This document shows positions 2,508 to 57,186 of a DNA stretch of 64,000 nucleotides, piece after piece; the first letter of the stretch is position 1; every line of letters begins with the position of its first letter. Made by a program: the position numbers and the translations under genes. The stretch is taken from positions 62,001-126,000 of IMG/VR virus record IMGVR_UViG_3300032116_000004; one strand, 5' to 3'. The notes below the pieces were generated by a model. The model was not told the DNA's origin. It made no database searches and saw nothing but the letters and a program-made list of their open reading frames with translations.

Positions 2508-4712
2508 ATGGCCTGCGCAGGCGCACTCACCTCGATCATAATGACTGCGGTTGGCGCATTTATCGCCAACGGAGGCCTCGCAGAAGTGTTTGGTGGAGCA
2601 CCTGTGGCCGGCGCAGCCGGTAGTGCGGCCGAAGGTTTAGTCACTGTGTATACTCCATCGGGTGAAATCTTTTCCATGAGCACTGCTGAAGCAGTGGCGT
2701 CGGGCATCATTGAAAATACTGCGAGCCAATCGTGGTTCAGCGGTCTCGGAGGTCTGGGAGACACTCTCAATTCCATGACCAACAGTTTTTTAGAATTCAC
2801 TGCGCCCATGAGAGAAGCCTGGAGCAATCTAGCCACCGCCCCGGCCGCAGCCGGCAAACAAGTATTCAATTCAGTTTCTGGAACCTGGGGACCAAAAACA
2901 GCACAATTTTTGTCATCGGTCACAGAAGGGGTGTTCAAGACCGCTATCCAAGAAAGTATCACTTGGGCTAGCCAAACTCTTGGGGGCACTGGTACATTGG
3001 TCGCAGGGGCGTTGGTTGGCGATCCCAAGATCCTAGGTCAGGCTTTCAATGCTGCCAATTCTTTCGCGCAGACAGCCAATGGCTTTATCAACGCAGCCGA
3101 GTCGGCCGGAACCTATCTCAACAAAACCTTCACCAACATGGAAAATACCATCACTGCCGGCGTGGATGGAGTCAGCAAATGGTTTGAAGGTCTGGGCGAT
3201 GACATCAGCAAACTAGGCAACACCGTGGACTGGGCCAAACTTGATTTCCTTGGCTATCCAGGACAACTGATCGCCAACCTTGAAAACAGTGGAACACTGG
3301 GCCCATTCTATGACAAACTGGGCAACATCCAGGTAGATCCCCGCACCGCACAGCAGTTGGGAGTGAACATAACCAATGCTTTATTGGGCCGTGAAGAATT
3401 GCGTCTCAAGGATCTCGGCATTGATCTCAATCAGATAGCGCGACAAGGTGCAAATCTGCCCGCCGGCATACAAAAAGAAATATACACAGAACTGACCAAA
3501 CTCACGCCCACTGAAGTCACACAGGTCAAAGGCATATTGAACAACACACAGGTCGCTGTGCAGAAAGGTCAAGACCTACTTGATCCACAAAAACTTTTTG
3601 CCTCCAGCTCCAGCACACTGACCACGCCTATCCGTGTGGGGTCTGTTGGCTTCCGTGGTATCTATGAAGCAAGTGGCAGCATCAATCCTGAACTCAATGA
3701 CTTAGGAGAAAATCTCAAAGGTATCATACCCGATGACCTGGCAGTGGCCAATTCCGCATTGGGCCGCAGTTTCCTACAGGTCAAGGGTATTTCAAATACC
3801 AGCAGTGATTCATTGGCCGCAAGTGTCCTGGAATTGGAAAACCTCAGAGATTTGCCTTTGATAGCCGGTCAGGAAGAATATGTGACCCAACCGGTGATTG
3901 ACTATTGGAAAAATTACTATGGCGAAGATTTTGGCATACAGTTGACCACTGGCAACAATGGGTCATATGTAGTTTCAGACATCGTGGGATTTGCCGCAGG
4001 TTATAATTCAGGACAGCCTCTCCAGGACAATGGCCCGCTGTTGACCAGCCTCAACGCCAATGGTGCCTTTGCGGAATTCACACAAAGCCAGGGCATCTAC
4101 GAAACCATCCAGCAATTCTGTCTAGGCACATTTGGTCCAACTGCCAACCCCACACCAGTGGATCCGCCCAATGATGATTACCAGATAGAGATCCCTGTGG
4201 GATGGGCAGCCGCGGGCATTTATTATGGCGCTACAGGCAATATTGCCTTTCAAGATGCATGGCTAAATGGAATCATTCCTTATACCGCTGTGGCGTCAAC
4301 AGACATCTACGAAAACTATCCAGATGCGCAAACAGTAAACGCCAACGAAACAATCTGGCAAGAGCAGTATGGCAGAGAATATCTCAACAGACAACGTGCA
4401 GATCTCATCGTCACAGATATCAGAGCGTCTGACACAACTGCCATCAATTTTGGACAGTCCTTGCCTCAATTTGGTAGAAACACTGAATTCGGCGGACCGG
4501 CCATGTGGTTAGAGCGTGTGGCCAATGCCAACAGCCTAGGAGGGCAGGCCTTGATCGCTGCCATGCGCGAGGGTCGCAATCAAGCTAGATTGGATGATGC
4601 AGGCATCAAGACGGACACAGCACTGGCCACAGAACAACCGCAGTTCCCAGGAACGCTGGCGCCGAACACTTTGACCAAAGAAGAAGCCGACGCCCTGGTG
4701 ATTCGTTCCTAG
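2508..4712 (+). CDS. Large hypothetical protein, likely virion/baseplate associated
   Basis: 734 aa, Gly/Ala/Thr/Asn-rich, immediately after PAAR. Confidence 0.5.
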   Translation: MACAGALTSIIMTAVGAFIANGGLAEVFGGAPVAGAAGSAAEGLVTVYTPSGEIFSMSTAEAVASGIIENTASQSWFSGLGGLGDTLNSMTNSFLEFTAPMREAWSNLATAPAAAGKQVFNSVSGTWGPKTAQFLSSVTEGVFKTAIQESITWASQTLGGTGTLVAGALVGDPKILGQAFNAANSFAQTANGFINAAESAGTYLNKTFTNMENTITAGVDGVSKWFEGLGDDISKLGNTVDWAKLDFLGYPGQLIANLENSGTLGPFYDKLGNIQVDPRTAQQLGVNITNALLGREELRLKDLGIDLNQIARQGANLPAGIQKEIYTELTKLTPTEVTQVKGILNNTQVAVQKGQDLLDPQKLFASSSSTLTTPIRVGSVGFRGIYEASGSINPELNDLGENLKGIIPDDLAVANSALGRSFLQVKGISNTSSDSLAASVLELENLRDLPLIAGQEEYVTQPVIDYWKNYYGEDFGIQLTTGNNGSYVVSDIVGFAAGYNSGQPLQDNGPLLTSLNANGAFAEFTQSQGIYETIQQFCLGTFGPTANPTPVDPPNDDYQIEIPVGWAAAGIYYGATGNIAFQDAWLNGIIPYTAVASTDIYENYPDAQTVNANETIWQEQYGREYLNRQRADLIVTDIRASDTTAINFGQSLPQFGRNTEFGGPAMWLERVANANSLGGQALIAAMREGRNQARLDDAGIKTDTALATEQPQFPGTLAPNTLTKEEADALVIRS

Positions 4713-4731
4713 GTCAGTGGGCACTAACCTA
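4710..4731. promoter_or_regulatory. 22-bp palindromic operator-like element, copy 1
   Basis: TAGGTCAGTGGGCACTAACCTA. Confidence 0.75.
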
Positions 4732-4733
4732 CG

Positions 4734-4761
4734 AAAACCCTACAAACAGTAGGGTTTTTTT
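4734..4761 (+). terminator. Intrinsic terminator
   Basis: AAAACCCTAC-loop-GTAGGGTTTT plus T run. Confidence 0.75.
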
Positions 4762-4765
4762 GTGG

Positions 4766-4794
4766 TTGACCAAAAATCGCCATTTTGCTATAAT
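4766..4794 (+). promoter_or_regulatory. sigma70-type early promoter
   Basis: TTGACC-17-TATAAT with extended TG. Confidence 0.85.
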
Positions 4795-4826
4795 ATGAGT
4801 TATAGTAAACAACTTGGAGCCACAGT

Positions 4827-5000
4827 ATGTCTAAGAAACACTTTGAACTACTCGCCAAATACATCGATTCTATCATGGATCCGCATTGCCGTTTGCAAGC
4901 GGCTATCGCGGTGGCATCTGCTTGTAAAGAAGCCAATCGCAGATTTGACTCGGATCGATTCTTTGCCGCTTGCAACATCGGCGCCGCCGAGGTCAAATAA
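4827..5000 (+). CDS. Small early protein (57 aa, MSKKHFELLAKY...)
   Basis: GGAG RBS after the promoter; read manually, not in the ORF track. Confidence 0.7.
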   Translation: MSKKHFELLAKYIDSIMDPHCRLQAAIAVASACKEANRRFDSDRFFAACNIGAAEVK

Positions 5001-5001
5001 C

Positions 5002-5202: not shown

Positions 5203-5375
5203 CACAACGAGATGTCACCTTATCGATCACGTTCACACTGGATGACATCGAGGTGCTCCAGCGCATCTGGAATCGGTATGGTTATGTCATGGACGAGACC
5301 GGCATCATCTCTCACATATTAAACGAATATGAAATGAAGACTGCTGACAGTCTAAATACAAAGGTAAAGGCATGA
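5199..5375 (+). CDS. Small hypothetical protein (58 aa)
   Basis: ATGA overlaps at both ends; read manually. Confidence 0.55.
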   Translation: MTQRDVTLSITFTLDDIEVLQRIWNRYGYVMDETGIISHILNEYEMKTADSLNTKVKA

Positions 5376-6754
5376 CACAGGCACGCGATTGGCACAATGA
5401 TGAATTCAATGGATTAAAAGTGGCGGCAGATTGGATACAAGATCTCGAAGGCTCAGACTCTAGGCTACACAAAGAAGCAGTGATCGAAAAGGCTCTGGTA
5501 GCGGCTCGATTAGGGTCGGCAGGGGCGCAGTGTTTTTTATACAACTGCTACCTGACCTACAATCCTTATTTCGTCTATGGTGTGAAGAAGGTTCCAGAAA
5601 CCCAAGGACTCACAGGAAAAGACAATCCCTGGACTGAGTTCTGGGCTCTCACAGAAGGCCTCCGAACCCGTAGCATCACTGGCAACAAGGCACGTGATAG
5701 GATCGACGAACTGGCCGGTCGTTTTGACTCAGACGAGTGGAACGGCCTGGCCCGTCGTGTGCTGATCAAAGATCTCCGCTGTGGTATTTCAGAAAAGACC
5801 TTAAACAAAGTGCTGGGTAACTCGGAATGGAAGATACCGGTGTTCACTTGCCAACTGGCGCAAGACTCGGGCGATCATCCGGCCAAGATGAAAGGTCGAA
5901 AACGTATCGAATGTAAACTGGATGGTGTGCGTGTGCTGGCAGTGGTCAGCGGTAGCACAGTGAACCTCTACAGCCGCAACGGCAAACCCTTTGACAACTT
6001 TCCGCAGATCGCTGAAGCCATAGAAGATTGCAGGGCTGTGTTCCGTCACGGACTGAACTCAGGTGGTAGATTTGTGTTGGATGGTGAGATCGTGGGAGAG
6101 TCATTCCAGAAACTCATGCGTCAAGCACATCGTAAAAGCGATGCCCAAACTGATGGCATGGTTTATCATATCTTTGATATCATTCCTCTGGAAGATTTTG
6201 AGCGTGGGTTCTGGAACGCACAACAGCACAAGAGACTGGACATACTTAACCGGGCAATGGAACCGCTACAAGAGCAGACCGATTGCCTCCGTATCATGCC
6301 CGGACTGGAAGTGGATCTCGACACCGGAGAAGGTCATGACATCATGGATCGATTCGCCCAAGATGCTGTCACGGCCGGCTATGAAGGTATCATGATCAAG
6401 TCGGTGGATGCGCCCTATGAGTGCAAGCGAACGTCTTTTTGGATGAAGTGGAAACCCACCATAACAGTGGATTTGGAAATCGTGGGTTTCGAACAAGGAA
6501 CTGGTCGCAACGAAAAGCGATTGGGTGCTATAATTTGTGAAGGAGATGACAATGGCAGAAATATTCGTGTTAATGTTGGCAGTGGTTTGTCTGATAGCGA
6601 TAGGGATGACTTCTGGACCGCTCGCGATGACCTACTTGGTCGATTGGTTGAAATCCAAGCGGACGCAGTCACACAAAACCAAGACGGATCATACTCACTG
6701 AGATTTCCACGATTCGTGAGATTCCGTGGGTTTGAACCTGGAGAAAAAATTTGA
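5372..6754 (+). CDS. lig: ATP-dependent DNA ligase
   Basis: KLDGVR adenylation motif, LDGEI, EGIMIK, WMKWK, VGSG, SLRFPRF. Confidence 0.95.
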   Translation: MTQARDWHNDEFNGLKVAADWIQDLEGSDSRLHKEAVIEKALVAARLGSAGAQCFLYNCYLTYNPYFVYGVKKVPETQGLTGKDNPWTEFWALTEGLRTRSITGNKARDRIDELAGRFDSDEWNGLARRVLIKDLRCGISEKTLNKVLGNSEWKIPVFTCQLAQDSGDHPAKMKGRKRIECKLDGVRVLAVVSGSTVNLYSRNGKPFDNFPQIAEAIEDCRAVFRHGLNSGGRFVLDGEIVGESFQKLMRQAHRKSDAQTDGMVYHIFDIIPLEDFERGFWNAQQHKRLDILNRAMEPLQEQTDCLRIMPGLEVDLDTGEGHDIMDRFAQDAVTAGYEGIMIKSVDAPYECKRTSFWMKWKPTITVDLEIVGFEQGTGRNEKRLGAIICEGDDNGRNIRVNVGSGLSDSDRDDFWTARDDLLGRLVEIQADAVTQNQDGSYSLRFPRFVRFRGFEPGEKI

Positions 6755-6882: not shown

Positions 6883-6954
6883 GACATATTCCCCGTTCTG
6901 AGTGGTGGGCTTACATCAAATGGCGCATCCGTAAAATGTTTGCCCGACAGAGAT

Positions 6955-8380: not shown

Positions 8381-8399
8381 ATTGTGCTATAATAATATC

Positions 8400-21475: not shown

Positions 21476-21490
21476 TTAATGGAGGAAACA

Positions 21491-37102: not shown

Positions 37103-37693
37103 ATGCCCAATCTAGTGCCTATCGTGCTGGAACAGACTAGCCGTGGAGAACGCAGTTATGACATCTACAGCCGCCTGCTGAGAGATCGCATCATCATGCT
37201 GGATACAGACGTAAACTCACATTCAGCCAGCCTCATAGTGGCGCAGATGCTGTTCCTAGAAGCGGAAAATCCTGACAGAGACATCTTGTTCTATATCAAC
37301 TCACCAGGCGGGTCAATCACAGCGGGCATGAGCATCTATGATACCATGCAGTTCATCAAGTGTGATGTTTCTACCATAGTGTGTGGATTGGCCGCGTCGA
37401 TGGGCTCCATGCTGGCCTGCGCCGGCACTGCTGGCAAGCGGTTCATCCTGCCACACAGCCAGCACATGATCCATCAACCTCTGGGTGGAGCTGAAGGACA
37501 GGTCACTGAAGTGGAGATCCGTTACAAAGAACTCATGCGCTGGAAGAAGACCTTGACTGAACTCTATGTCCAGCACACCGGCAAAGACTATGCGACTCTG
37601 GAGAAAGATATGGATCGAGACAACTGGATGACAGCACAACAGGCCGTGGAGTATGGCCTAGCTGATCGCATCATCACCCAACGAGATGTCTAA
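37103..37693 (+). CDS. clpP: ClpP protease proteolytic subunit
   Basis: [46 protein letters not shown]. Confidence 0.97.
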
Positions 37694-39527: not shown

Positions 39528-39652
39528 TGGCTTTTTTCTCCCATTATACGCTGAGCCGTTTTGTAATTTCCTTGTCGGGCGTGGAAGCTGGCCGCTCTGG
39601 CCCGTGCTATGGATTCAAAAAAACAATATACAGAATTCCAAAAATTTTTCAT
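39518..39652 (-). CDS. 44-aa small protein MKNFWNSVYCFFESIARARAAS...
   Basis: AAGGAA RBS; TATAAATA at 39683-39690 on the minus strand. Confidence 0.6.
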   Translation of the reverse strand: MKNFWNSVYCFFESIARARAASFHARQGNYKTAQRIMGEKSQCC

Positions 39653-39730
39653 CTTTATTTCCTTTCTCATGGTTTCTACTGATATTTATATGTTGCACTA
39701 CCACAAAATGTTAAAATATTATGACAACCA

Positions 39731-39795
39731 AGGTTAGTGCGCACTAACCCAGTGTTTTTGCCCAGGTTGACCAGAAATCGCCATTTTGCTATAAT
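39731..39795 (+). promoter_or_regulatory. Palindrome plus early promoter cassette, copy 2
   Basis: Perfect GGTTAGTGCGCACTAACC (39732-39749); TTGACC-17-TATAAT. Confidence 0.88.
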
Positions 39796-39824: not shown

Positions 39825-40199
39825 ATGAGCGACTTTAAATCTTGGGAAGAAATGTCAGATCTAGAACGTGCATCATGCACTTTCTGGGACATGTATAAAG
39901 ACGCCTACGGTGTGCGCCCACGTGGCATCGACACCAGCGGCTGGACCTTGGCGGATTTCGACCGCGAGTTTGCATCCCTAGGTCAGGTCATCGAAGCCGA
40001 AGAAGCCCAACGCCGCGAAAGCGAAGCCGAGGCCACGGCCCGGGTGGAGAAAGCCATTGACACCCTGATGCGTTCAGGTGCCCGGGATCGTGCGACAGCG
40101 ATACGTTGGTTGCATGAATCACACGATACCCAGGGAGACGATGAGTATCTCTGTTTCCAACTGGGCCTGCCTTACGGTTATTTCCGTAAGGCGGCTTGA
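39825..40199 (+). CDS. Conserved early phage protein
   Basis: WDMYKDAYGVRPRG; GARDRATAIRW; GLPYGYF. Confidence 0.8.
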   Translation: MSDFKSWEEMSDLERASCTFWDMYKDAYGVRPRGIDTSGWTLADFDREFASLGQVIEAEEAQRRESEAEATARVEKAIDTLMRSGARDRATAIRWLHESHDTQGDDEYLCFQLGLPYGYFRKAA

Positions 40200-40605: not shown

Positions 40606-41057
40606 AACAGCAGATCCGATACGATCATACCTTTGAGTTTGACCTCACGGGCCGGGTGCAGTTTGGTGATCTGCCCATAGATACCGTGCATGACTTGTTC
40701 CAGGATGGTCGTGTGGCCAGCAAGTTCCTGGAGAACATCTTGCCAGTATGGTTCGAAGATCTAGAATACGTGGATCAAGACGGCTATGATCATGTGCAGA
40801 CATCCACTGGTCGCAGGCTGGACCTCAAAGGCTTCACCCGCGGTGGTGCCAGTTATGCTCCCAGCAACATGCTGGGTGCCGGGCGCAAGATCGATAGAGA
40901 GAAATTGCATGAGCATGCTCTCACCATCGACTACATACTGAGTGATATCACAGAATTCCCCCGGGTGCGCATCGTGTTCAAACGTGGAACCGAATTGGTA
41001 GAAAACTATCCTGCGGGCAAGATACCCACACAAGAACGAGAACGACTGTTTGGATAA
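40602..41057 (+). CDS. Putative PD-(D/E)xK type II restriction endonuclease (PvuII-like)
   Basis: DLFQD..., GYD-x10-DLK, C-terminal KIP; directly upstream of an MTase. Confidence 0.5.
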   Translation: MKQQIRYDHTFEFDLTGRVQFGDLPIDTVHDLFQDGRVASKFLENILPVWFEDLEYVDQDGYDHVQTSTGRRLDLKGFTRGGASYAPSNMLGAGRKIDREKLHEHALTIDYILSDITEFPRVRIVFKRGTELVENYPAGKIPTQERERLFG

Positions 41058-41844
41058 AAATAACATCATATTGCAGGACTGCGTTACAGGCATGCAGGCC
41101 TTGCCCGAAGCCAGTGTCGATATCTGCGTGACTTCTCCGCCCTACAACCTGGGCATTGGTTACAGCACCTATCGCGACGACCGGCCACGGCAGGACTATC
41201 TCCGATGGCTGGGGTCGGTGTTCGGCGAGATCAAAAGAGTGCTGACCGATGACGGACACTTCTGGCTCAACGTAGGTTACAGCAATCAAGATCCCTGGGT
41301 GGCACAAGACGTGGCGCAGGTGGCTCGTGATCATTTCGTGCTCCAGAATTCCGTGATGTGGGTCAAATCGATCTATGTCAACGGAAAGACATCGGGACAC
41401 TTCAAACCAGTGAACTCCGAACGTTACATCGCTCCCACATGGGAGCATGTGTTCCATTTCACCAAGGCAGGTCGGAGCCCATTGGACAAACTCACCATTG
41501 GTGTGCCCTACGAATACTATGCGGAGAATCTACGCAATCCCAAGACTGCCGGAACCAAACCCAATCTACGCTGTCGTGGCAACACCTGGTTCATACCCTA
41601 TGAGACCATCAGCAACCGGGCCAAGCATCGAGGCGATCATCCGGCCACTTTTCCTGTGGCCTTGGCCGAAAATTGCATCCGTGTGTCAGGCATCACATCA
41701 GGCACTGTGCTGGACCCATTCATGGGATCAGGCACTACTGCCATCGCGGCCCATCGCTGTGGTCTGTCATGGATGGGCTTTGAAATTGATGCAAACTACA
41801 GGGACTTTGCCCTGGATCGCATAGCCGCAGAAACCGCTGGTTGA
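41050..41844 (+). CDS. Beta-class DNA methyltransferase (N4-C/N6-A)
   Basis: TSPPY, HPATFP, VLDPFMGSGTT. Confidence 0.93.
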   Translation: MDKNNIILQDCVTGMQALPEASVDICVTSPPYNLGIGYSTYRDDRPRQDYLRWLGSVFGEIKRVLTDDGHFWLNVGYSNQDPWVAQDVAQVARDHFVLQNSVMWVKSIYVNGKTSGHFKPVNSERYIAPTWEHVFHFTKAGRSPLDKLTIGVPYEYYAENLRNPKTAGTKPNLRCRGNTWFIPYETISNRAKHRGDHPATFPVALAENCIRVSGITSGTVLDPFMGSGTTAIAAHRCGLSWMGFEIDANYRDFALDRIAAETAG

Positions 41845-41870
41845 CCAGAAATAGTGATTTCGGTTATAAT
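41841..41870 (+). promoter_or_regulatory. Early promoter (no palindrome)
   Basis: TTGACC-18-TATAAT. Confidence 0.75.
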
Positions 41871-41876
41871 ATGGGT

Positions 41877-42107
41877 ATGCTAAGAAATGACCGAATCACC
41901 TGGGGCCTCAAATGGGCCGGAACTATCGTAACCCTGGCTGGAGCACTCTGCACCAGCCTCCGCATTGATCCTTTGAACGTATATCTGCTGAATCTAGGCA
42001 GTTTGGTTTTTGTGCTATGGGCCGTGCGTATCCGCGACCGTGCCATGATCACTGTGAACGTGGGCTTATTGTCCATATACCTTGTAGGGTTATTTTTCAC
42101 TAGGTAA
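41877..42107 (+). CDS. Three-TM small membrane protein (possibly leaderless)
   Basis: Hydrophobic; ATG begins 7 nt after the -10 hexamer. Confidence 0.7.
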   Translation: MLRNDRITWGLKWAGTIVTLAGALCTSLRIDPLNVYLLNLGSLVFVLWAVRIRDRAMITVNVGLLSIYLVGLFFTR

Positions 42108-42156
42108 GTGCGCACTAACCTAGCGGTTGACCAAAAAAGCCATTTTCGGTTATAAT
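42100..42156 (+). promoter_or_regulatory. Palindrome plus early promoter cassette, copy 3
   Basis: CTAGGTAAGTGCGCACTAACCTAG; TTGACC-18-TATAAT. Confidence 0.88.
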
Positions 42157-42185
42157 ATAGGTATAGTAAACATCAAGGAGCAGAT

Positions 42186-42464
42186 ATGTCATATTACATC
42201 ATAGTCAAAGCCACAGGACTCATCGTTTCGGATGGCCCAAATCGCACTCGTGCCTATCGCACTCAAGGTGCCGCCAAGGCCACCATCACTAGATTGGTCA
42301 AGAAAGCCGGTTGGAAGGGCAACGAGTTTGAAATCACTCACACCCGCGATTACCAACCACGCATGGTCACTCGTCGGAATTTGATGTCAGGCCAGGAGTT
42401 CCAAGAAGATGTGAACACTCCTTACTTCTGCTCGCCTGCATCCGAATCCTACTGGAGCATGTGA
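42186..42464 (+). CDS. Conserved early phage protein
   Basis: NLMSG.EF.E..NTP..CSP.SE.YWSM motif. Confidence 0.8.
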   Translation: MSYYIIVKATGLIVSDGPNRTRAYRTQGAAKATITRLVKKAGWKGNEFEITHTRDYQPRMVTRRNLMSGQEFQEDVNTPYFCSPASESYWSM

Positions 42465-42909: not shown

Positions 42910-43068
42910 TTACTTCTTGGCTTCTTTCTTTTCGTCTTTCTTGTCCTTCTTTTCTTCTTTCTTCACTTCGGCTTTTTTTGGCTCTTCTTTCTTAGCAGGA
43001 GCGGGTGTCTGGGCGACGGCCACACCAGCGGCAAAAAGACCAGCGATAAGAGTTGCGATTGCTTTCAT
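42910..43068 (-). CDS. Small exported Lys/Glu-rich protein (acid-shock/Asr-like composition)
   Basis: Signal peptide, KKEE repeats, GGAGG RBS. Confidence 0.7.
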   Translation of the reverse strand: MKAIATLIAGLFAAGVAVAQTPAPAKKEEPKKAEVKKEEKKDKKDEKKEAKK

Positions 43069-43260: not shown

Positions 43261-43530
43261 GTGAAATTTATCAATCCCGAAACCAAGACGTTCCGTGTGC
43301 TCAAAGCACTGCAAAATGGTCAACCCGTGACCGAATCCAAGGCCAAGAAAATGGGCATCGGCAATCTCAACGCCGAAATCCATCGCATCCGCCAGCATGG
43401 ATTCGCTGTCTACACCAACCGTCGCACCGCAGGTAATGGTGTGAACGTGACTGAGTATGTGTTGGGCAAACCAAGCCGTAACATGGTTGCTTTGGCATAC
43501 AAAGCACAGGCCATGGGTATCACGGTCTAA
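43261..43530 (+). CDS. Winged helix-turn-helix DNA-binding protein
   Basis: VL.ALQ.G..VT....GI.N..AEI.RIR..G..VY pattern. Confidence 0.7.
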   Translation: MKFINPETKTFRVLKALQNGQPVTESKAKKMGIGNLNAEIHRIRQHGFAVYTNRRTAGNGVNVTEYVLGKPSRNMVALAYKAQAMGITV

Positions 43531-43571: not shown

Positions 43572-43601
43572 AAAAGGCTACCACGGTAGCCTTTTTTTTT
43601 T
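43572..43601 (+). terminator. Intrinsic terminator
   Basis: AAAAGGCTACC/GGTAGCCTTTT plus T run. Confidence 0.88.
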
Positions 43602-43603: not shown

Positions 43604-43632
43604 TTGACCGGTAATTTCTTTTTTGCTATAAT
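43604..43632 (+). promoter_or_regulatory. Early promoter
   Basis: TTGACC-17-TATAAT. Confidence 0.75.
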
Positions 43633-43637
43633 TAGAT

Positions 43638-44102
43638 ATGCTAAAAAAACTCATGCAACGATTAGGACGACATCGGGTGATCATGGATCGCCAGGACGAC
43701 GAACCTTATCTGGAAAGATATTATCTATTCCTCAAGGATCGCCAACGGTTTCCGTTCAATGTGTTCTTGCACCGATTCCTCAAGGGTGATCCCCACGATG
43801 TGCATGATCATCCCTGGCCCTATGCCACTCTGATATTGAAAGGCGGATACTATGAATGGGTTCCACAGTTTGATAGCCAAGGGCGCAAATCCAGTGAGAT
43901 TCGTCACTGGCGTGGCCCCGGACATTTCCGCATCTGTGGTGCTGGCAGTTACCATCGCATTGAACTCAAACCGGGTGTGACTGCCTGGACCTTGTTCATG
44001 CCCGGACCACATCGACGCGAATGGGGATTTTTGTTTAACAACAAGTGGATCCCCCACAACGAATATTTCCAACTGAGACGTTTGCTAAACAACAAGGAGT
44101 AA
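43638..44102 (+). CDS. Cupin-like conserved phage protein
   Basis: YLERYYL, HDHPW, GGYYE, HRIEL, WGF. Confidence 0.75.
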   Translation: MLKKLMQRLGRHRVIMDRQDDEPYLERYYLFLKDRQRFPFNVFLHRFLKGDPHDVHDHPWPYATLILKGGYYEWVPQFDSQGRKSSEIRHWRGPGHFRICGAGSYHRIELKPGVTAWTLFMPGPHRREWGFLFNNKWIPHNEYFQLRRLLNNKE

Positions 44103-49853: not shown

Positions 49854-50315
49854 GTGAAACTGTATTTCGCCTATGGTGCCAATCTCAGCCACGAAAGCAT
49901 GGCCCATCGCTGTCCTCGTGCCCGCCCATTCCAATCATTCTATCTGCGTGGTTGGCAACTGGATTTTGCCACGCATGCCACAATACGACCCAACCCAGGA
50001 CGATCGGTGCCCGGTGCGCTGTGGCGCATCACTGACGACTGCGAAGCCAGTTTGGATGCCTTTGAAGGTTACCCTCTCTATTATTCCAAAAGGATCCTGG
50101 CGCAGGACGGCTACGAATTCATGGTCTATATCATGAACCGACCCCAATATGGATCAACCTATTGGAGTTATGTAGACCTCATAGCCCAAGGCTATCAGGA
50201 TTGGAATCTGGATACCGAGCCACTTTGGCAACAGGTTGACCAGATATTGCTTCCTGCGTATAATGAAAAAGAACAGTGGACGAAGTCACCAGACAAAGAT
50301 TCCGTGCCGTTTTAG
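49854..50315 (+). CDS. Gamma-glutamylcyclotransferase (AIG2-like)
   Basis: YFAYGANL, M..RCP, LDAFEGYP..Y. Confidence 0.85.
   Translation: MKLYFAYGANLSHESMAHRCPRARPFQSFYLRGWQLDFATHATIRPNPGRSVPGALWRITDDCEASLDAFEGYPLYYSKRILAQDGYEFMVYIMNRPQYGSTYWSYVDLIAQGYQDWNLDTEPLWQQVDQILLPAYNEKEQWTKSPDKDSVPF
50236..50264 (+). promoter_or_regulatory. Internal early promoter
   Basis: TTGACC-17-TATAAT. Confidence 0.6.
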
Positions 50316-51960: not shown

Positions 51961-51981
51961 ACTTCAATTTAATTTCTCATC

Positions 51982-53121
51982 ATGACATCATATTTTAAAA
52001 CTGCAACCAAAGGCACCAATCCATTTGCACCTCCTCCCAAAGACATCCAGACACCTTTGGTATCTACGGGCAATATCTACGAACCTCTGGTACAACGTGC
52101 CATGGGCATCGCCAACGAAGATGTAATTGAAAAAGCCATTGAATCGCTGAAGGCTAGACTTGGTGGTCAGCGATACAAACAGGAACACTTCGGTCGCCTA
52201 GAACTGATTGATCCAAATCTGATTGACATCAACATTGATATCCAACGTCTGCTGGAAAAAGCGCACATCGGTGGCAACATCATTGAACTGTTTGATCCCA
52301 GGATCATGCAACCTTTGAACGTGATCTACATCAAGGCCACTGGTCGCTACAGTGCCTGGGAGGGCCAACAGAGTGGAACAGCCTTTGCACTGATGTTTTA
52401 CTTTGGATTGATCGATCCAGACACACTGATTCAGTGCAAGGTTGTGGATGATGATCTTGAGGTTCCAGGATCCACACTTCGAGGTGAAGCAGTGGGCAAC
52501 TATGGTTTCCGTTGCATCAACTACAAAGGTCGCAAAGAGCCCGATCTGTTCTATATTTTCCGTAGCATGGTCAATGGTGTCAGATTGTATGACAGTGAAC
52601 TTACTGAAGACCTGCAGGCCAATGAGATACAGAACATGCTACAATCGCACAACATGTTTGCCGCTCCCGGAGTAGAAGCACAAGGTCAACGAGCCAAACC
52701 CGGTATGGTAACCCATGTCAGTAGCATGCTCAAGCTGGCCGGACATGGCACTGAACCTGACCACTTTGAAGTGACCAAGGGTGATCTTGACTGGGTGCTC
52801 AAGTGGCATGATCAGTTCTATGCCAGCGAAAAAGGTGTAGATGGCGGCTATCTCATCACGTTTGGTAGATTCGCTGTGCTGTGTCGCAACCAAGGCATAG
52901 AAATCACTCGCGAGCATGAACTAGAATTCTACAAGCACATGAAACGCTATGGGTCGCCTAAAGCGTTCCATCAAGACTGCTGGCAACGCTACAAAAAATG
53001 GGCCGGATCGGGATGGAAGGATGCCTGTCTGTTGCCCATCTGGATCAAAGACTACATGAAAAAAGGAGGCACACTGCCTCTGCCCACAGTGCCAAACTAT
53101 GACGAATACAAGTCTCTCTGA
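51982..53121 (+). CDS. Divergent ParB/Srx-like domain protein
   Basis: IDIQR.L...HI...I...FDP..., WEGQQ in place of DGQH. Confidence 0.55.
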   Translation: MTSYFKTATKGTNPFAPPPKDIQTPLVSTGNIYEPLVQRAMGIANEDVIEKAIESLKARLGGQRYKQEHFGRLELIDPNLIDINIDIQRLLEKAHIGGNIIELFDPRIMQPLNVIYIKATGRYSAWEGQQSGTAFALMFYFGLIDPDTLIQCKVVDDDLEVPGSTLRGEAVGNYGFRCINYKGRKEPDLFYIFRSMVNGVRLYDSELTEDLQANEIQNMLQSHNMFAAPGVEAQGQRAKPGMVTHVSSMLKLAGHGTEPDHFEVTKGDLDWVLKWHDQFYASEKGVDGGYLITFGRFAVLCRNQGIEITREHELEFYKHMKRYGSPKAFHQDCWQRYKKWAGSGWKDACLLPIWIKDYMKKGGTLPLPTVPNYDEYKSL

Positions 53122-53467
53122 CGCACATAATTTTTACCTTTGGCGCCATCGTTATGTGGACGATGATACCGAAGCAGTGATCACACGCACCTGTTTTGGT
53201 ATCACTGGCAATCTCGATTCCAGGCAAAATGGCTATGAAGGTCATGTGGGACACGCAGTGCGCTGGGCGGCCACTTGGTCTGGGCCCGAACGCCCTATCC
53301 GAGAACTGGAACATCGTCTCAAGGCAGCCTTCCGTGATTATCTCGTCAGCGGACACAATGACTATGTATATGAGTGGGTGGACGAAACCATACCATTCGA
53401 AACCATCCGCAACTGGGTGGAGTGGGAAGTAGAAAACACATTTTCTGATATCCGCCGTGACACATAG
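53099..53467 (+). CDS. GIY-YIG/T5orf172-like small protein
   Basis: FYLW...FGIT....R...Y...ELE..LK...EW. Confidence 0.5.
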   Translation: MTNTSLSDAHNFYLWRHRYVDDDTEAVITRTCFGITGNLDSRQNGYEGHVGHAVRWAATWSGPERPIRELEHRLKAAFRDYLVSGHNDYVYEWVDETIPFETIRNWVEWEVENTFSDIRRDT

Positions 53468-54182
53468 CATCTACCAGCAGGACTGTGTAGTGGGCATGCA
53501 GGAACACGTGGCCGATGGCACAGTAGATCTCATATTCACTGATCCGCCCTATGGCATAGCCGGTGATCAACTAGACACGCACTACAATCGAGACGACAGC
53601 AAGGTCATCGCCGGTTATGTGGATGTGCCCAGAGATCAATATGCCCAATGGTGTCATGCCTGGATCCAGGAATGTGAGCGAGTGTTGCGGCCCGGTGGAT
53701 CCTTGTATATCGTGTCTGGCTATTCAAATCTACATCATATTCTCAACGCCTTGCACTACACACAACTCGAAGAAATCAATCATATCATCGCCCAATACAC
53801 CTTTGGAGTATACACCAAAAAGAAATGGGTCTCGAGCCATTACCATGTGCTGTTCTGGTCCAAGCGAGAACGAGGCCAACAGAAGAGGATCTTCAACACA
53901 CATTGTCGTTTTGCTGATACCACAGAATCATACAACGACCGACTCAGTGTGCAGACCTTGCCTAGAGAATACAAGACGGGCGAGATCCGCAACAACAATC
54001 AGTTGGCCGAATCGTTCATTGAAAAGTTCATCGATTACAGTTCCAATCTAGGAGACTTGGTGCTGGATCCCTTTGGAGGATCGTTCTCCACGGGCCGTGC
54101 CGCTCTCCGGTTGGGACGTAGATTCGTTGGATTCGAACTCAACCCACACGCATACCAACATTTTGGGCAGACCCTAGGTTAG
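53457..54182 (+). CDS. Beta-class DNA adenine methyltransferase
   Basis: TDPPY, VLDPFGGSFST, GFELN. Confidence 0.9.
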   Translation: MTHSIYQQDCVVGMQEHVADGTVDLIFTDPPYGIAGDQLDTHYNRDDSKVIAGYVDVPRDQYAQWCHAWIQECERVLRPGGSLYIVSGYSNLHHILNALHYTQLEEINHIIAQYTFGVYTKKKWVSSHYHVLFWSKRERGQQKRIFNTHCRFADTTESYNDRLSVQTLPREYKTGEIRNNNQLAESFIEKFIDYSSNLGDLVLDPFGGSFSTGRAALRLGRRFVGFELNPHAYQHFGQTLG

Positions 54183-54229
54183 TGCCCACTGACCCCGCGG
54201 TTGACCAGAAATAGCCATTTTGCTATAAT
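54175..54229 (+). promoter_or_regulatory. Palindrome plus early promoter cassette, copy 4
   Basis: TAGGTTAGTGCCCACTGACC (reverse complement of copy 1); TTGACC-17-TATAAT. Confidence 0.85.
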
Positions 54230-54255
54230 TAGGACATACTTTAAAAAGGAGCCCT

Positions 54256-54522
54256 ATGAAACTGGACCCATGGACGCAGTTCAATCTCAGCAGAGAAGAT
54301 CAACAGTTCTTCACAGCATTCGCCAGCCCCACCACAGAATCCAGCCTAGTCAAAGATGTGCCCATTGGCGCCCTGGAACAGGTGCGCCCTATCCTGGCCC
54401 GCATCCGAGCCCTCAGCGGACGCAAGACCTACATCATGTTCCGTGGGCGCAAAAATCGATACCACGGGCAAAGCACCACTTGGAAACAAGATGCCAACCG
54501 TTTTGCGGTGTATTTTAGGTAA
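54256..54522 (+). CDS. Early hypothetical protein
   Basis: AAGGAG RBS. Confidence 0.7.
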   Translation: MKLDPWTQFNLSREDQQFFTAFASPTTESSLVKDVPIGALEQVRPILARIRALSGRKTYIMFRGRKNRYHGQSTTWKQDANRFAVYFR

Positions 54523-54582
54523 GTGGGCACTAACCTACGGGTTTTTGCCCAGGTTGACCGAAATTTACCATTTTGCTATAAT
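54516..54582 (+). promoter_or_regulatory. Palindrome plus early promoter cassette, copy 5
   Basis: TAGGTAAGTGGGCACTAACCTA; TTGACC-17-TATAAT. Confidence 0.88.
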
Positions 54583-54614
54583 ATAGGTATAGTAAATGAT
54601 AAGGAGTTAGCCCT

Positions 54615-54914
54615 ATGTTAAAAAGAACACTGAAATTCACCAATGCCGCGGACATCGATGACATCATCCGTGCATACGATTTCAAACCCATGGCAGGTCG
54701 TGAAGACTGCTATGTGGAAGGCAAGGTCATCACCAAAGGTTACAATCCTGAAATGGGTTATTCATGTTTCTGCATCAAAGCCACCCGTGACGTGTTCGGT
54801 GGTGAAGACCAGCCCGAAGGAACCCGAGGTAGCCGAGTAGGCAAACTGGTCTACGTGCCTTTTGAAGTTGATTTCCTCGAGCACGATGCTCGTATCATGA
54901 ACCTTTCCAAGTAA
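54615..54914 (+). CDS. Early hypothetical protein
   Basis: IRAYDFKP...DCYVEG. Confidence 0.75.
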   Translation: MLKRTLKFTNAADIDDIIRAYDFKPMAGREDCYVEGKVITKGYNPEMGYSCFCIKATRDVFGGEDQPEGTRGSRVGKLVYVPFEVDFLEHDARIMNLSK

Positions 54915-54924
54915 GGAGCCCAAA

Positions 54925-55266
54925 ATGGAATACACTCAAGATCAAGTGAACGCAATCGTGGCCGAAGCCAAAAGCGAAGCATTCAAGGCCGCAGACAATT
55001 TTTTCCAGACTCGTTTGGGCGGCCGAGACCAGATGGCCTGTGGTTTTGCCTGGGTTGACATCTTTGGTATCAAAGGTAATACCCGATTGGGTCGCATGCT
55101 CAAGACAGCAGGTCTGCGCAAGAGTTACTCAGGCGGTCTGCAGATCTGGAACCCAGCCAATTATGGTTGCCAGAACGTTGACACTCTTGAAGCCGGTGCC
55201 GAAGCGGCCGCCAAGATTTTTGAGAAGTATGGTTTCCGTGCCTATGCTGGTAGCCGCTTAGACTAA
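54925..55266 (+). CDS. Conserved early phage protein
   Basis: CGFAWV, Q....EAGA.A.A..F..YG..A...SRLD. Confidence 0.8.
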   Translation: MEYTQDQVNAIVAEAKSEAFKAADNFFQTRLGGRDQMACGFAWVDIFGIKGNTRLGRMLKTAGLRKSYSGGLQIWNPANYGCQNVDTLEAGAEAAAKIFEKYGFRAYAGSRLD

Positions 55267-55275
55267 GGAGACAGC

Positions 55276-55467
55276 ATGAAATTTGAAGACATCAAAGCCG
55301 AAATCTCCCGTAGCGACATCGTGGTGTTGAAACAAAGATACGAACTGTATCGTGATCTCAAAAGCATGGGAGTGGTTGACATCATGGTGCGAGATTTGCT
55401 AGAATTAGAACTTGCTCGCCGGGGTGTGTTTGAAGACCTTGGCCCTTATCGAACCATCAATAGTTAA
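55276..55467 (+). CDS. Hypothetical protein
   Basis: AAGGAG RBS. Confidence 0.65.
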   Translation: MKFEDIKAEISRSDIVVLKQRYELYRDLKSMGVVDIMVRDLLELELARRGVFEDLGPYRTINS

Positions 55468-55476
55468 GGAGACAAT

Positions 55477-55944
55477 GTGAACTGTTCACCTACACTGACC
55501 GCAGAAGAATTCAAAGTGTTGCACAACAGCCTCTGTGCTTTGAGCACTATCGACCATCCTCGAGTGTCTGAATTAGTCGAACGCATCCGCGAGGTAGCCC
55601 TCAAAGGTGCCTACGAGCAAGATTCGGCGGCATTCGACCGCAAATGGAAACAATATGATCATTGGCGTGGGCACTACGGGCTGACCAGCACCTGGAGCAT
55701 CTACGAAGTGGACAACATGACCCTATGCCATCCCTACAAGGACGCAGAGTATGTGGTCTATGATCAGCACTGGGGCGACGGTGGTGAAGTGGTTCGCAAG
55801 ATCGAAGGCCGAGATTGGAATGCCTTGTATCGCGCCGCTGACTCTGCCATACAAGCCTCGGGCGATGGCCATCATTGCTTCATCGAATCATTTGAGCCCA
55901 TCGCTGATAAACCCGGGCATCTGCGGTTGAGCACCGGCAGTTGA
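55477..55944 (+). CDS. Hypothetical protein
   Basis: W..LY.AAD..I..SGD.HH.FIE.F motif. Confidence 0.75.
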   Translation: MNCSPTLTAEEFKVLHNSLCALSTIDHPRVSELVERIREVALKGAYEQDSAAFDRKWKQYDHWRGHYGLTSTWSIYEVDNMTLCHPYKDAEYVVYDQHWGDGGEVVRKIEGRDWNALYRAADSAIQASGDGHHCFIESFEPIADKPGHLRLSTGS

Positions 55945-55945
55945 T

Positions 55946-56284
55946 ATGAGCAAGACCGTGGCGCTGATGTGGGATTGTCTGGGCTTGGAGGCCGCTGTGA
56001 ATGTCACTGACATCAATCAGCAAAGAATGTGGGCCGCACTAAAAGGGCAGGATCTGACCAAAGTGCGAACCGAGCCCAACCTCATGCACTGGCGTTTACG
56101 AGCCCAGGCCAACACGCAAAGGCACTACGAGATCTATCTCTTGGAAATAGAGGATGACATCACTGTGGAAGATATCACTCAGGCATTCGAAGATGCTCCA
56201 CAACAGATGGCCGATACTGTGCGGAGGATTGGTCATAAATTTTATTCAGATCGAGCGAGAGAGGATACAATAAAGATTAGGTAA
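55946..56284 (+). CDS. Hypothetical protein
   Basis: WDCLGLE, LRAQANTQRHYEIY. Confidence 0.75.
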   Translation: MSKTVALMWDCLGLEAAVNVTDINQQRMWAALKGQDLTKVRTEPNLMHWRLRAQANTQRHYEIYLLEIEDDITVEDITQAFEDAPQQMADTVRRIGHKFYSDRAREDTIKIR

Positions 56285-56293
56285 GGAGAAGAT

Positions 56294-56491
56294 ATGCAAG
56301 TGAAACAAGGAAGTCTGTGGAGCAGTAGCGACGGCAAAGAATTCGTGGTGCTCCATGTGGTAGATGTAGATGGACACACCTGGGTGCATTATCGTGACCA
56401 GGAGTGCCCTGAATGTCATGAACATTCATGTTATATAGAAAGTTTCTTAGAACGTTTCACACCAATAATCAATGACCGGAGGACGAGATAA
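56294..56491 (+). CDS. Hypothetical protein
   Basis: WVHY, SCYIESF..RF. Confidence 0.7.
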   Translation: MQVKQGSLWSSSDGKEFVVLHVVDVDGHTWVHYRDQECPECHEHSCYIESFLERFTPIINDRRTR

Positions 56492-56901
56492 TGGGTCTAG
56501 ACATGTATGCTTACGCGGCCGCCCGCGCTGGACAACAAAAAGAATTCTGGGACACGGCTGAGTTGGCCCAAGGTAGCAACGAATATGAGAGCAAGACCGT
56601 GGCCCGACCCAGAGAGATCGCCTACTGGCGCAAGCATCCCAACCTACACGGCTGGTTTCGGGCCGAATGGGAAAGCCTGGGCAACGAAGGTTCGTTCAAT
56701 GGTGATGAACTGGAGATCACCTGGGACATGCTGGAACGCCTGGAATACGATGTGCGGAATGGCGAACTGCCCCAGACACAAGGTTTCTTCTTCGGCAACA
56801 ACTCCGATGCTGACTACTACAACGATGACTTAGAGTTTATCAAAAACGCCCGTGCGGAATTGTTCATGGGTCTCAAAGTATTCTACAATTCATCATGGTA
56901 A
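56491..56901 (+). CDS. Conserved phage protein
   Basis: MGLDMY, YWRKHPNLHGW, LP.TQGFFFG, YNSSW. Confidence 0.82.
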   Translation: MGLDMYAYAAARAGQQKEFWDTAELAQGSNEYESKTVARPREIAYWRKHPNLHGWFRAEWESLGNEGSFNGDELEITWDMLERLEYDVRNGELPQTQGFFFGNNSDADYYNDDLEFIKNARAELFMGLKVFYNSSW

Positions 56902-57116
56902 AAGAAACCGATTTCAGACTTTGGTTGCGCCACATGTGGTTGGCCAATTGCGAAGAGCATGATGCTTATGGTGAACCACCTTATTCCATGACGGAATACT
57001 GGCGCCAGTATCGATGGTTCTTGCGCACTCAGTATCGCCGACACAAGAATCGCCCGCAGTATATTTCTCCAGAAATCCGGAGCATCATGCGCCCACCGCA
57101 GGACGCAGGGTGCTAG
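56895..57116 (+). CDS. Hypothetical protein
   Basis: Coupled ORF. Confidence 0.6.
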   Translation: MVKETDFRLWLRHMWLANCEEHDAYGEPPYSMTEYWRQYRWFLRTQYRRHKNRPQYISPEIRSIMRPPQDAGC

Positions 57117-57118
57117 AA

Positions 57119-57186
57119 CTAGGTAAGTGCGCACTAACATAGCGATTTTAGGGTGGTTGACCAGAAATGGCATTTTCGGTTATAAT
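57119..57186 (+). promoter_or_regulatory. Palindrome plus early promoter cassette, copy 6
   Basis: CTAGGTAAGTGCGCACTAACATAG; TTGACC-18-TATAAT. Confidence 0.88.

What the first reader, a model, noticed from the sequence alone, without database searches (positions are those of the whole stretch)
4710..57186. A 22-bp palindrome helically phased upstream of six early promoters
Seen: six copies of a palindrome (consensus TAGGTTAGTGC|GCACTAACCTA) at 4710, 39731, 42100, 54175, 54516 and 57119. Each lies upstream of a near-identical GGTTGACC-N-CATTTT-N-TATAAT promoter, five of them followed by a TATAGT-containing tail. The distance from palindrome centre to the first T of the -35 is 15.5, 15.5, 26.5, 26.5, 27.5 and 45.5 bp. 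That places the centres at about -51, -62 and -81 from the expected TSS, stepping by roughly whole helical turns and never overlapping the -35. Known: activators that contact RNA polymerase (CRP/FNR class I sites near -61.5 and -82.5) show this face-of-helix spacing. Inference: a dimeric activator, either host-derived or carried in the virion, defines an immediate-early regulon. Five related promoters (41841, 43604, 50236, 58371, 63709) lack the box and may form a second tier.
Basis: partly seen in the sequence, partly recalled or inferred. Interest (0 to 1): 0.82.

Follow-up and report, generated by a model that had tools for sequence, protein, structure and literature searches.

The report
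Phased palindromic operator upstream of phage promoters
An uncultured 316-kb freshwater phage and its relatives carry a conserved 16-22 bp palindrome at whole-helical-turn distances upstream of some strong host-type promoters, which looks like the docking site of an unidentified dimeric regulator that touches RNA polymerase.

Summary
Six copies of GTWAGTG-NN-CACTWAC lie 15.5, 15.5, 26.5, 26.5, 27.5 and 45.5 bp upstream of the -35 of six near-identical sigma-70-type promoters; shuffles expect none. The window is bases 62,001-126,000 of a 315,778-bp IMG/VR jumbo-phage contig with no close cultured relative.

Relatives carry the same box before the same promoter. Across 136 unique box-promoter pairs, spacing peaks at 15.5-16.5, 25.5-26.5, about 33-36, 45.5-46.5 and 57.5 bp, with a best period of 10.1-10.25 bp. 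Orthologous junctions switch between these classes.

The box is not an RNA hairpin or a terminator. Its arms are conserved without covariation, predicted hairpins are weak, and in many relatives it lies after a canonical terminator, in untranscribed spacer. The best reading is an operator for a dimeric protein acting on RNA polymerase from one face of the helix.

The activator reading is unproven. Boxed promoters are near-consensus and closer to consensus than unboxed ones, so phi29-p4-like restraint is at least as likely as activation. No binding protein was identified, and the conserved wHTH does not clearly track the box. Boxes are gained and lost at orthologous promoters within shuffled promoter-gene cassettes that resemble T4 PeSLs.

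The parts
4710..4731 (.). Box 1 (TAGGTCAGTGGGCACTAACCTA). Its first TAG is the stop codon of the 734-aa ORF 2508-4712. The centre is 45.5 bp from the -35.
4734..4761 (+). Canonical intrinsic terminator (AAAACCCTAC-AAACA-GTAGGGTTTTTTT) lying between box 1 and its promoter.
   Evidence: -14.3 kcal/mol, z -4.1
4766..4794 (+). Promoter 1 (TTGACC-17-TATAAT). It drives the 57-aa ORF 4827-5000, small ORFs and the DNA ligase 5372-6754.
39730..39751 (.). Box 2 (AAGGTTAGTGCGCACTAACCCA), 26.5 bp from the -35.
39767..39795 (+). Promoter 2, driving ORF 39825-40199.
42101..42122 (.). Box 3 (TAGGTAAGTGCGCACTAACCTA), 15.5 bp from the -35. The TAA stop of the leaderless ORF 41877-42107 lies inside it.
42127..42156 (+). 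Promoter 3 (18-bp spacer), driving ORF 42186-42464.
54175..54196 (.). Box 4 (TAGGTTAGTGCCCACTGACCCC; degenerate outer positions), 15.5 bp from the -35. The stop codon of the DNA methylase 53457-54182 lies inside it.
54201..54229 (+). Promoter 4, driving ORF 54256-54522. It has no TATAGT tail.
54516..54537 (.). Box 5 (TAGGTAAGTGGGCACTAACCTA), 27.5 bp from the -35. The stop of ORF 54256-54522 lies inside it.
54554..54582 (+). Promoter 5, driving ORF 54615-54914.
57120..57141 (.). Box 6 (TAGGTAAGTGCGCACTAACATA), 26.5 bp from the -35.
57157..57186 (+). Promoter 6 (18-bp spacer), driving ORF 57216-57926.
41841..41870 (+). Box-less family promoter. An ATG lies 6 nt after the -10, giving a leaderless 76-aa membrane ORF (41877-42107).
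43604..43632 (+). Box-less family promoter directly after a strong terminator. The leaderless ORF 43638-44102 is also leaderless in 13 relatives.
58371..58399 (+). Box-less family promoter with a 76-nt leader before ORF 58476-58811.
43261..43530 (+). Winged-helix protein (Pfam HTH_39). It is the only recognisable DNA-binding protein found in the early region and is a weak candidate for the box-binding factor.

Best explanation
The box (core GTWAGTG-NN-CACTWAC, 22 bp with its flanks) is a DNA operator for a two-fold symmetric, dimeric sequence-specific protein. The protein is probably phage-encoded and has not been identified. It sits in the short spacer between the end of one transcription unit and the next standardised sigma-70-type promoter, always clear of the -35. 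Its centre lies on one face of the helix, at about -50.5, -61.5, -70, -81 and -92.5. From there the bound dimer most likely touches the host polymerase, either the alpha C-terminal domain (class-I-like geometry) or, in the closest class, sigma region 4. In this way it sets the output of a small, evolutionarily labile subset of promoters: six in this genome and one to a few in relatives. Shown here: the site, its sequence conservation without covariation, its DNA-level location, its tie to the promoter and its phasing. Inferred: protein binding, polymerase contact and the direction of the effect. Because the boxed promoters are already near-consensus, I judge restraint or timed shut-off by over-stabilising polymerase (as phi29 p4 does at A2c) slightly more likely than activation, at roughly 55:45.
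For: The chance expectation is zero, and all six copies precede family promoters. The same box precedes the same promoter in dozens of diverged IMG/VR relatives. Positions 7 and 10, which were not part of the search pattern, are conserved: G in 37 of 46 and C in 43 of 46. The variable arm positions 3 and 14 are complementary in 24 of 46 pairs against 24.6 expected, and G7-to-A changes leave C10 unchanged in 7 of 9 cases, with only one compensated (A-T). This means half-sites degenerate independently, as expected for a protein site and not for a stem. A complete scan unbiased for gaps of 5-35 bp gave spacings of 15.5-17.5 (27 pairs), 23.5-28.5 (47), 33.5-36.5 (6) and 45.5 (1), with none at 18.5-22.5 or 29.5-32.5; the best period was 10.1 bp with R 0.86. 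In the wider set of 136 pairs, R was 0.70 at 10.25 bp. Linker sequences diverge while their lengths are kept. Orthologous junctions switch class: the methylase stop-to-box junction is 15.5 in the window and 26.5 in L278/L282 through an 11-bp insert; the MSKKHFELL gene is 45.5 in the window and 15.5-16.5 in relatives; the junction after the 734-aa gene is 45.5/46.5 versus 25.5/26.5. At least 20 relatives have the order terminator, then box, then promoter, with the box 5-6 nt after the stem, so it lies outside both transcripts. RNA folds of the boxes are weak (-2.6 to -10.5 kcal/mol, z +0.6 to -2.7) compared with true terminators (-13.5 to -14.3, z about -4). Boxed promoters are closer to consensus than unboxed ones. 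Stabilising contacts that repress strong promoters and activate weak ones have precedent (PMC11806353 and its references 77 and 84 on p4 at A2c).
Against: No binding protein was found. Pfam and PHROGs scans of about 75 window ORFs gave only one wHTH, and it also occurs where canonical boxes are absent. The most consistently boxed gene encodes a 57-aa protein that models as a plain three-helix bundle with no significant structural match. The instances are related by descent and by cassette duplication, so the periodicity statistics overstate independence, and my clustering attempt could not separate them. The third spacing class is broad (32.5-36.5), and about 8 pairs sit off phase at 18.5-20.5. 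The 30-bp step equals the natural size of a terminator module, and the 11-bp step is a T-tract module, so modular assembly could imitate phasing. No transcript or binding data exist.
Confidence: 0.55

Rival explanations
1. The box is the site of a dimeric activator, host-encoded or delivered in the virion, that recruits polymerase in class I fashion and defines an immediate-early regulon.
For: The commonest position is -61.5, with others at about -70, -81 and -92.5, which is the classical class I ladder (established knowledge of CRP). A T-tract lies between the box and the -35 in the 26.5 class, where the alpha C-terminal domain would dock. The box never overlaps the core promoter.
Against: The core promoters are near-consensus and better than the unboxed ones, so they should not need recruitment. 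The second largest class, at -50.5, and the absence of any site at -41.5 do not fit CRP/FNR rules. There is no sign of a host regulon, since the perfect 18-mer is essentially absent from 185,579 species genomes. No CRP/FNR-like gene was seen in the window.
Confidence: 0.3
2. The box is mainly an evolutionary passenger. On this view it is part of a PeSL-like portable terminator-operator-promoter cassette, often carrying a leaderless GIY-YIG nuclease gene, that spreads and recombines between promoters. Its spacing classes would then reflect cassette architecture rather than selection on helical phase, and it might be the nuclease's own operator or target.
For: Gene order around these promoters is heavily shuffled between relatives. 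For four of the six window boxes, a relative has box, promoter and GIY-YIG-like ORF followed by the ortholog of the window's boxed gene (L011 for 39825; L159/L366/L319 for 42186; L107 for 54256; L322 for 5003). About 19 of 81 boxed promoters drive such ORFs. Tandem boxes with duplicated linkers occur (L072). PeSLs are described as composite terminator/promoter motifs that mediate shuffling (PMC4122927).
Against: In a protein-selected sample, only 17 of 59 GIY-YIG-like genes have the box. The window has six boxes and no such gene. Arm sequence is conserved over deep divergence, with about 32% protein identity in the neighbouring gene, and linker length is kept while sequence drifts, which argues for function beyond hitch-hiking. 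The GIY-YIG assignment is itself below Pfam thresholds.
Confidence: 0.15
3. The palindrome acts as an RNA or DNA hairpin, serving as a weak intrinsic terminator, a 3' stabiliser or a processing site of the upstream transcript.
For: It overlaps or abuts the upstream stop codon in the window. In the 26.5 class a T-run follows 5-6 nt later, and a simple scan flags 39732 and 54523 as terminator-like.
Against: There is no covariation and mismatches are uncompensated. Folding energies are weak and inconsistent. The T-run is offset or absent. Canonical terminators co-occur with the box on either side of it, and the box often lies after the terminator.
Confidence: 0.05

Closest known systems
Class I sites of CRP/FNR-family regulators
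   Same: A roughly 22-bp two-fold symmetric site. The TTAGT-N4-ACTAA core has the 5-4-5 geometry of FNR-type boxes (from memory). Centres lie on one helical face at about -61.5, -71, -81 and -92.5, with room for the alpha C-terminal domain between site and -35.
   Different: The half-site sequence is different. A large class sits at -50.5 and none at -41.5. The core promoters are consensus-strength. No CRP/FNR-family protein was found, and no host regulon was detected.
Phage phi29 protein p4 at promoters A3 and A2c
   Same: A phage regulator bound to an inverted repeat upstream of the -35 that contacts the polymerase alpha subunit. It activates a weak promoter and represses a strong one by blocking escape (references in PMC11806353). 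This fits a phased upstream site at strong promoters.
   Different: p4 acts at two or three promoters in a 19-kb genome, with A-tract sites and protein p6. Here a 16-bp core is spread over several cassette promoters of a 316-kb genome, and the protein is unknown.
PeSLs (promoter-early stem-loops) of T4-like phages
   Same: Short composite motifs between genes that join a terminator stem-loop to a near-consensus sigma-70 early promoter, lie in plastic regions and mark gene shuffling (PMC4122927, PMC2839356). This clade has the same terminator-promoter cassettes and the same shuffling.
   Different: The box is an extra, sequence-conserved, non-covarying palindrome that is separate from the terminator stem-loop and phased to the promoter. 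No such operator is described for PeSLs.
P2 Ogr / P4 Delta sites and Mu Mor/C sites at phage promoters
   Same: Dyad-symmetric sites centred near -55 or -43 through which small phage proteins act via polymerase subunits (from memory).
   Different: Those promoters lack a good -35 and depend fully on the activator, with a single fixed position. Here the promoters are consensus and there are several phased positions.
KorB operators (OB) of IncP plasmids
   Same: A palindromic operator (TTTAGCSGCTAAA) repeated about a dozen times, lying just upstream of the -35 or further away, and setting a global regulon of a mobile element (from memory).
   Different: KorB acts at any distance as a sliding clamp, so it needs no helical phasing. 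No ParB-family gene was seen in the scanned ORFs.

Membership tests
CRP/FNR class I/II activator site | Palindromic site with conserved 5-bp arms at a fixed separation | tested here: inconclusive
   The arms GTWAGTG/CACTWAC are conserved around a variable centre. The geometry resembles FNR 5-4-5, but the sequence matches no known box and no paper holds the motif.
CRP/FNR class I/II activator site | Centres at -41.5 (class II) or at -61.5, -71.5, -82.5 and -92.5 (class I) | tested here: inconclusive
   -61.5 is commonest, and about -70, -81 and -92.5 are present. However, 32 of 136 pairs are at -50.5/-51.5 and none at -41.5. Transcription start sites are inferred, not mapped.
CRP/FNR class I/II activator site | Target promoters have weak core elements and depend on the activator | tested here: not met
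   Boxed promoters score 5.94 of 6 at the -35 and 5.78 of 6 at the -10, better than unboxed ones.
CRP/FNR class I/II activator site | A cognate CRP/FNR-family protein is present | tested here: inconclusive
   None was found among about 75 window ORFs. The other 252 kb of the genome and the host were not available.
PeSL composite terminator-promoter cassette | A stem-loop terminator directly joined to a near-consensus early promoter between genes | tested here: met
   Terminator stems abut the -35, or the box, in the window (4734-4761; 43572-43595) and in many relatives.
PeSL composite terminator-promoter cassette | The repeated palindrome is itself the stem-loop (structure conserved, sequence free) | tested here: not met
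   The box sequence is conserved, without covariation and with weak folds. It co-occurs with separate terminators.
PeSL composite terminator-promoter cassette | Association with insertions, deletions and gene shuffling between relatives | tested here: met
   Orthologous genes sit behind different cassettes and in different orders, and GIY-YIG-like ORFs are present or absent between the box and the gene.
Intrinsic (rho-independent) terminator | A G+C-rich stem immediately followed by a U-run | tested here: not met
   The box stem has 3-4 G-C pairs and often an internal mismatch. The T-run is absent (15.5 class) or 5-6 nt away (26.5 class).
Protein operator (generic dimeric DNA-binding site) | A demonstrated protein-DNA complex | not testable with these tools
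   This needs EMSA, footprinting or DAP-seq. Only sequence signatures support it.

The most novel reading that the evidence does not exclude
The box is a portable operator. It would be a 16-bp module that moves with, or is captured by, standardised promoter cassettes (often those of leaderless GIY-YIG nuclease genes). This would let one unidentified phage regulator be wired to, or unwired from, individual early genes within short evolutionary times, with helical phase as the only constraint kept. That would make this clade of uncultured jumbo phages a natural example of plug-and-play cis-regulatory rewiring, with a new regulator family still to be found.
Probability: 0.25. Interest if true: 0.7.

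Novelty: new variant of a known kind. Interest (0 to 1): 0.55.

Why it matters
Transcription control in uncultured jumbo phages is almost unknown. This is a cleanly defined cis element with a testable geometry: a 10-bp ladder at consensus promoters. It is conserved across a large freshwater phage clade, yet gained and lost at orthologous promoters. It provides a direct handle for fishing out a new phage regulator by DNA pull-down. It also offers a natural series of spacing variants for asking how an upstream-bound factor affects already-strong promoters, whether by activation or by blocking escape. Finally, it extends the PeSL idea, in which mobile promoter cassettes also carry an operator. 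For genome annotation it marks transcription-unit boundaries in these phages.

Tried and rejected
1. GenBank phages: there is no near match, and protein hits reach only 27-42% identity to Pelagibacter phage Mosig, SCTP-2, XacN1 and others. No annotated reference is therefore available.

2. Host regulon: the perfect 18-mer in 185,579 species genomes gave two contigs, one of them a mis-binned phage fragment.

3. Literature: a search for the motif found nothing relevant. The recalled Xanthomonadales LexA-box similarity could not be documented and was dropped.

4. Repeat arrays in other viral contigs: arrays of GTTAGTGAGCACTAAC-like repeats lie beside a terminase operon, a G-rich tract and a DnaA-box-like sequence (L021 and others). 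They share no proteins with the window and were probably pulled in by my own pattern, so I do not treat them as related.

5. wHTH as the factor: it is conserved in 50 loci but shows no clean co-occurrence with boxes, has no solved relative, and the protein atlas only confirms the HTH_39 family.

6. The 57-aa protein encoded by the most consistently boxed gene, tested as a possible autoregulator: the AlphaFold model is confident (pLDDT 88.6) and shows a three-helix bundle, but Foldseek found nothing below E = 1.

7. GIY-YIG protein as the binder or target: only 29% of such genes are boxed in a protein-selected sample.

8. RNA evidence: no RNA run holds this phage. Metatranscriptome contigs of relatives laid on 52500-58499 were sparse, could be DNA, and gave no transcript ends.

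9. Clustering instances into independent lineages failed, because single linkage merged nearly all of them.


Full report
**What is in the sequence.** A search for the 22-bp consensus with up to three mismatches finds five copies, against none in 100 shuffles. The sixth copy, at 54175, has a good 16-bp core but degenerate outer positions. All six lie on the + strand side of a near-identical promoter, GGTTGACC-N16-18-TATAAT. Five of the six promoters carry the TATAGT tail. In four cases the stop codon of the upstream ORF lies inside the box, because the box contains TAG and TAA. At 4710 a canonical terminator lies between the box and the promoter.

**Where the window comes from.** The window is bases 62,001-126,000 of IMG/VR contig 3300032116_000004, which is 315,778 bp long. 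Near-identical contigs and many DNA runs come from lake and other freshwater samples. It has no close relative among GenBank phages. Its proteins reach only 27-42% identity to jumbo phages such as SCTP-2, XacN1 and RsoM2USA, and to Pelagibacter phage Mosig. The window encodes ribonucleotide reductase, DNA ligase, a ClpX-like ATPase, UvdE, a radical-SAM protein, two DNA methylases, NAD synthase, a Bax1-I homologue and many small ORFans, almost all on the + strand.

**Relatives.** Pattern scans of IMG/VR show that both the promoter type and the box are properties of a large clade of uncultured phages, many on contigs of 300-357 kb. This gave 92 unique pairs, 81 of them with a proper -10. In the window's own contig only the six known copies match, so the strict boxes cluster in one 53-kb segment. 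A looser seventh copy lies near contig position 234.6 kb (L135). Related genomes carry one to three strict copies.

**Spacing.** The 81 pairs fall at 15.5-17.5 (27 pairs), 23.5-28.5 (47 pairs, of which 28 are at 26.5), 33.5-36.5 (6) and 45.5 (1). None falls at 18.5-22.5 or 29.5-32.5, although the scan accepted any gap. The best-fitting period is 10.1 bp with R = 0.86. A looser set of 136 unique pairs adds small groups at 45.5-46.5 and 57.5-58.5, and about eight off-phase cases; there R is 0.70 at 10.25 bp. With the -35 T taken as -35, the centres are at -50.5/-51.5, -60.5/-61.5, about -70, -80.5/-81.5 and -92.5.

**Limits of the spacing statistics.** The instances are not independent, and I could not separate lineages by clustering. 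Two other observations speak for constraint. First, linker sequences within a class differ greatly while their length stays within 1 bp. Second, orthologous junctions switch between classes. The methylase stop-to-box junction is 15.5 in the window and 26.5 in L278/L282, through an 11-bp insert. The MSKKHFELL gene is 45.5 in the window and 15.5-16.5 in relatives. The junction after the 734-aa gene is 45.5/46.5 or 25.5/26.5. A caveat remains: the 11-bp step is a T-tract module and the 30-bp step is a terminator, so modular construction could produce part of this ladder.

**DNA site or hairpin.** Positions 7 and 10, which my search patterns left free, are G in 37 of 46 and C in 43 of 46 instances. 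The variable arm positions 3 and 14 are complementary in 24 of 46 pairs, against 24.6 expected if they were independent. G7-to-A changes leave C10 unchanged in 7 of 9 cases, with only one compensated. As RNA, the window's boxes fold at -2.6 to -10.5 kcal/mol, with z scores of +0.6 to -2.7. Two true terminators in the window give -13.5 and -14.3 kcal/mol, with z about -4. Canonical terminators occur on either side of the box. At least 20 relatives have the order terminator, then box, then promoter, with the box starting 5-6 nt after the stem. In that position the box lies after the end of the upstream transcript and before the start of the next. The element therefore acts as double-stranded DNA, and its symmetry with independently degenerating half-sites is what a dimeric protein site looks like.

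**Direction of the effect.** Boxed promoters are not weak. They match the -35 at 5.94 of 6 and the -10 at 5.78 of 6, better than unboxed family promoters at 5.65 and 5.55, and about half have the TGn extension. That is not the profile of activator-dependent promoters. A factor bound on one face upstream, never overlapping the core promoter, is the geometry of a polymerase contact. Such contacts are known to activate weak promoters and to repress strong ones by hindering escape. This is described for phi29 p4 at A2c and, more generally, in a recent survey of E. coli transcription factors (PMC11806353). I therefore lean slightly towards restraint or timed shut-off, but activation is not excluded, and nothing here measures expression.

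**Who binds.** This remains unknown. The perfect 18-mer is practically absent from 185,579 bacterial species genomes, so a host regulon has no support. One of the two hits, L245, is a phage fragment of this clade binned into a bacterial MAG. Among about 75 window ORFs, only one recognisable DNA-binding protein appeared: the HTH_39 winged helix at 43261. It is conserved at 56-99% identity in 50 loci. It also occurs in loci with 7-13 promoters and no box, and in a 353-kb contig without a strict box-promoter pair. The gene most consistently preceded by a box encodes a 57-aa protein and is boxed in 10 of 14 variants. It models confidently as a three-helix bundle without any significant structural match.

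**Evolution.** Box presence differs between orthologous promoters of relatives, and gene order around the cassettes is heavily shuffled. For four of the six window boxes, a relative has box, promoter and a leaderless GIY-YIG-like ORF, followed by the ortholog of the window's boxed gene. About a quarter of boxed promoters drive such ORFs. In a sample chosen by the protein itself, however, only 17 of 59 are boxed, and the GIY-YIG assignment is below Pfam thresholds. This resembles the PeSL cassettes of T4-like phages (PMC4122927), with an operator added. I regard cassette mobility as the way the box spreads, not as a replacement for its function.

**Verdict.** The activator interpretation is only partly supported. 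The element is a new variant of a known kind: a phased upstream operator within mobile promoter cassettes. It belongs to an unstudied phage clade, and the regulator is still to be found.

Noticed in passing
window 41841-42107, 43604-44102; relatives L273, L277, L289, L290, L293, L294 and others: These look like leaderless genes. At the promoters 41841 and 43604 the ATG lies 5-6 nt after the -10 (ATGCTAAGAAA..., ATGCTAAAAAA...). The 154-aa ORF 43638-44102 keeps this arrangement in 13 relatives. GIY-YIG-like ORFs in relatives are leaderless in the same way.
   Followed up: partly
window 41050-41844 and 53457-54182: Two N6/N4 DNA methylase genes (Pfam N6_N4_Mtase) lie just upstream of boxes. The stop codon of the second is inside box 4, and orthologs in L278/L282 keep the methylase-box junction.
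   Followed up: partly
window, all family promoters (e.g. 42151-42185): There is a standardised expression cassette: TATAAT, 5-6 nt, then (T/C)ATAGTAA, an A-rich stretch, AAGGAGC and an ATG, giving a leader of about 22 nt. The TATAGT at about -1 to +5 is itself -10-like, as at sigma-dependent pause sites.
   Followed up: no
window 39625-39714 (- strand): A small conserved minus-strand ORF (39670 down to 39518) starts near box 2. A promoter-like TTAACA-18-TATAAA on the minus strand has its -35 also 26.5 bp from the box centre, so the box would lie symmetrically between divergent promoters. In L249 and L316 the ORF start abuts the box, so this may be specific to the window.
   Followed up: partly
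L021:6380-6560; also L012, L018, L020, L022, L024, L031, L109, L113: Unrelated viral contigs carry arrays of 4-6 GTTAGTGAGCACTAAC-like palindromes. They lie next to a G-rich tract (GGGCCCCCCACCCCCC) and a DnaA-box-like TGTGGATAA, beside a terminase large-subunit operon, which may be a cos/pac or origin region. They share no proteins with the window.
   Followed up: partly
L201, L209, L217, L262, L264, L274, L276, L346, L383-L448: In relatives without the box, other palindromes recur upstream of the same promoter type, for example GTAATACT-NN-AGTATTAC, AGTAGTAC-N5-GTACTACT and GTTGTA-N4-TACAAC. They may be terminators or alternative operators.
   Followed up: no
L245 (DITO01000251.1, Erysipelotrichaceae MAG UBA6182): This 4.6-kb contig of a bacterial MAG carries the box, promoter and tail of this phage clade. 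It is probably a mis-binned phage fragment.
   Followed up: partly
window 58371-58811: The promoter 58371 shares 18 nt after its -10 with the promoter 41841. Here that stretch opens a 26-codon leaderless upstream ORF (58406-58486) that overlaps the start of ORF 58476-58811. That ORF encodes a protein conserved in the clade with a lysine-rich tail, and in relatives it always has a leader of 60-80 nt.
   Followed up: partly
window 42910-43068 (- strand): A 52-aa minus-strand ORF has a signal-peptide-like start and a Lys/Glu-rich tail. It is one of very few minus-strand genes and lies just upstream of the wHTH gene, which has no family promoter.
   Followed up: no
window 21458-22735, 26000-27019, 37686-39008, 49854-50315, 60098-60766, 61549-62316: Several auxiliary genes are present: UDP-glucose dehydrogenase, UvdE UV endonuclease, a radical SAM/SPASM protein, a GGACT cyclotransferase, a Bax1-I family membrane protein and NAD synthase.
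   Followed up: no
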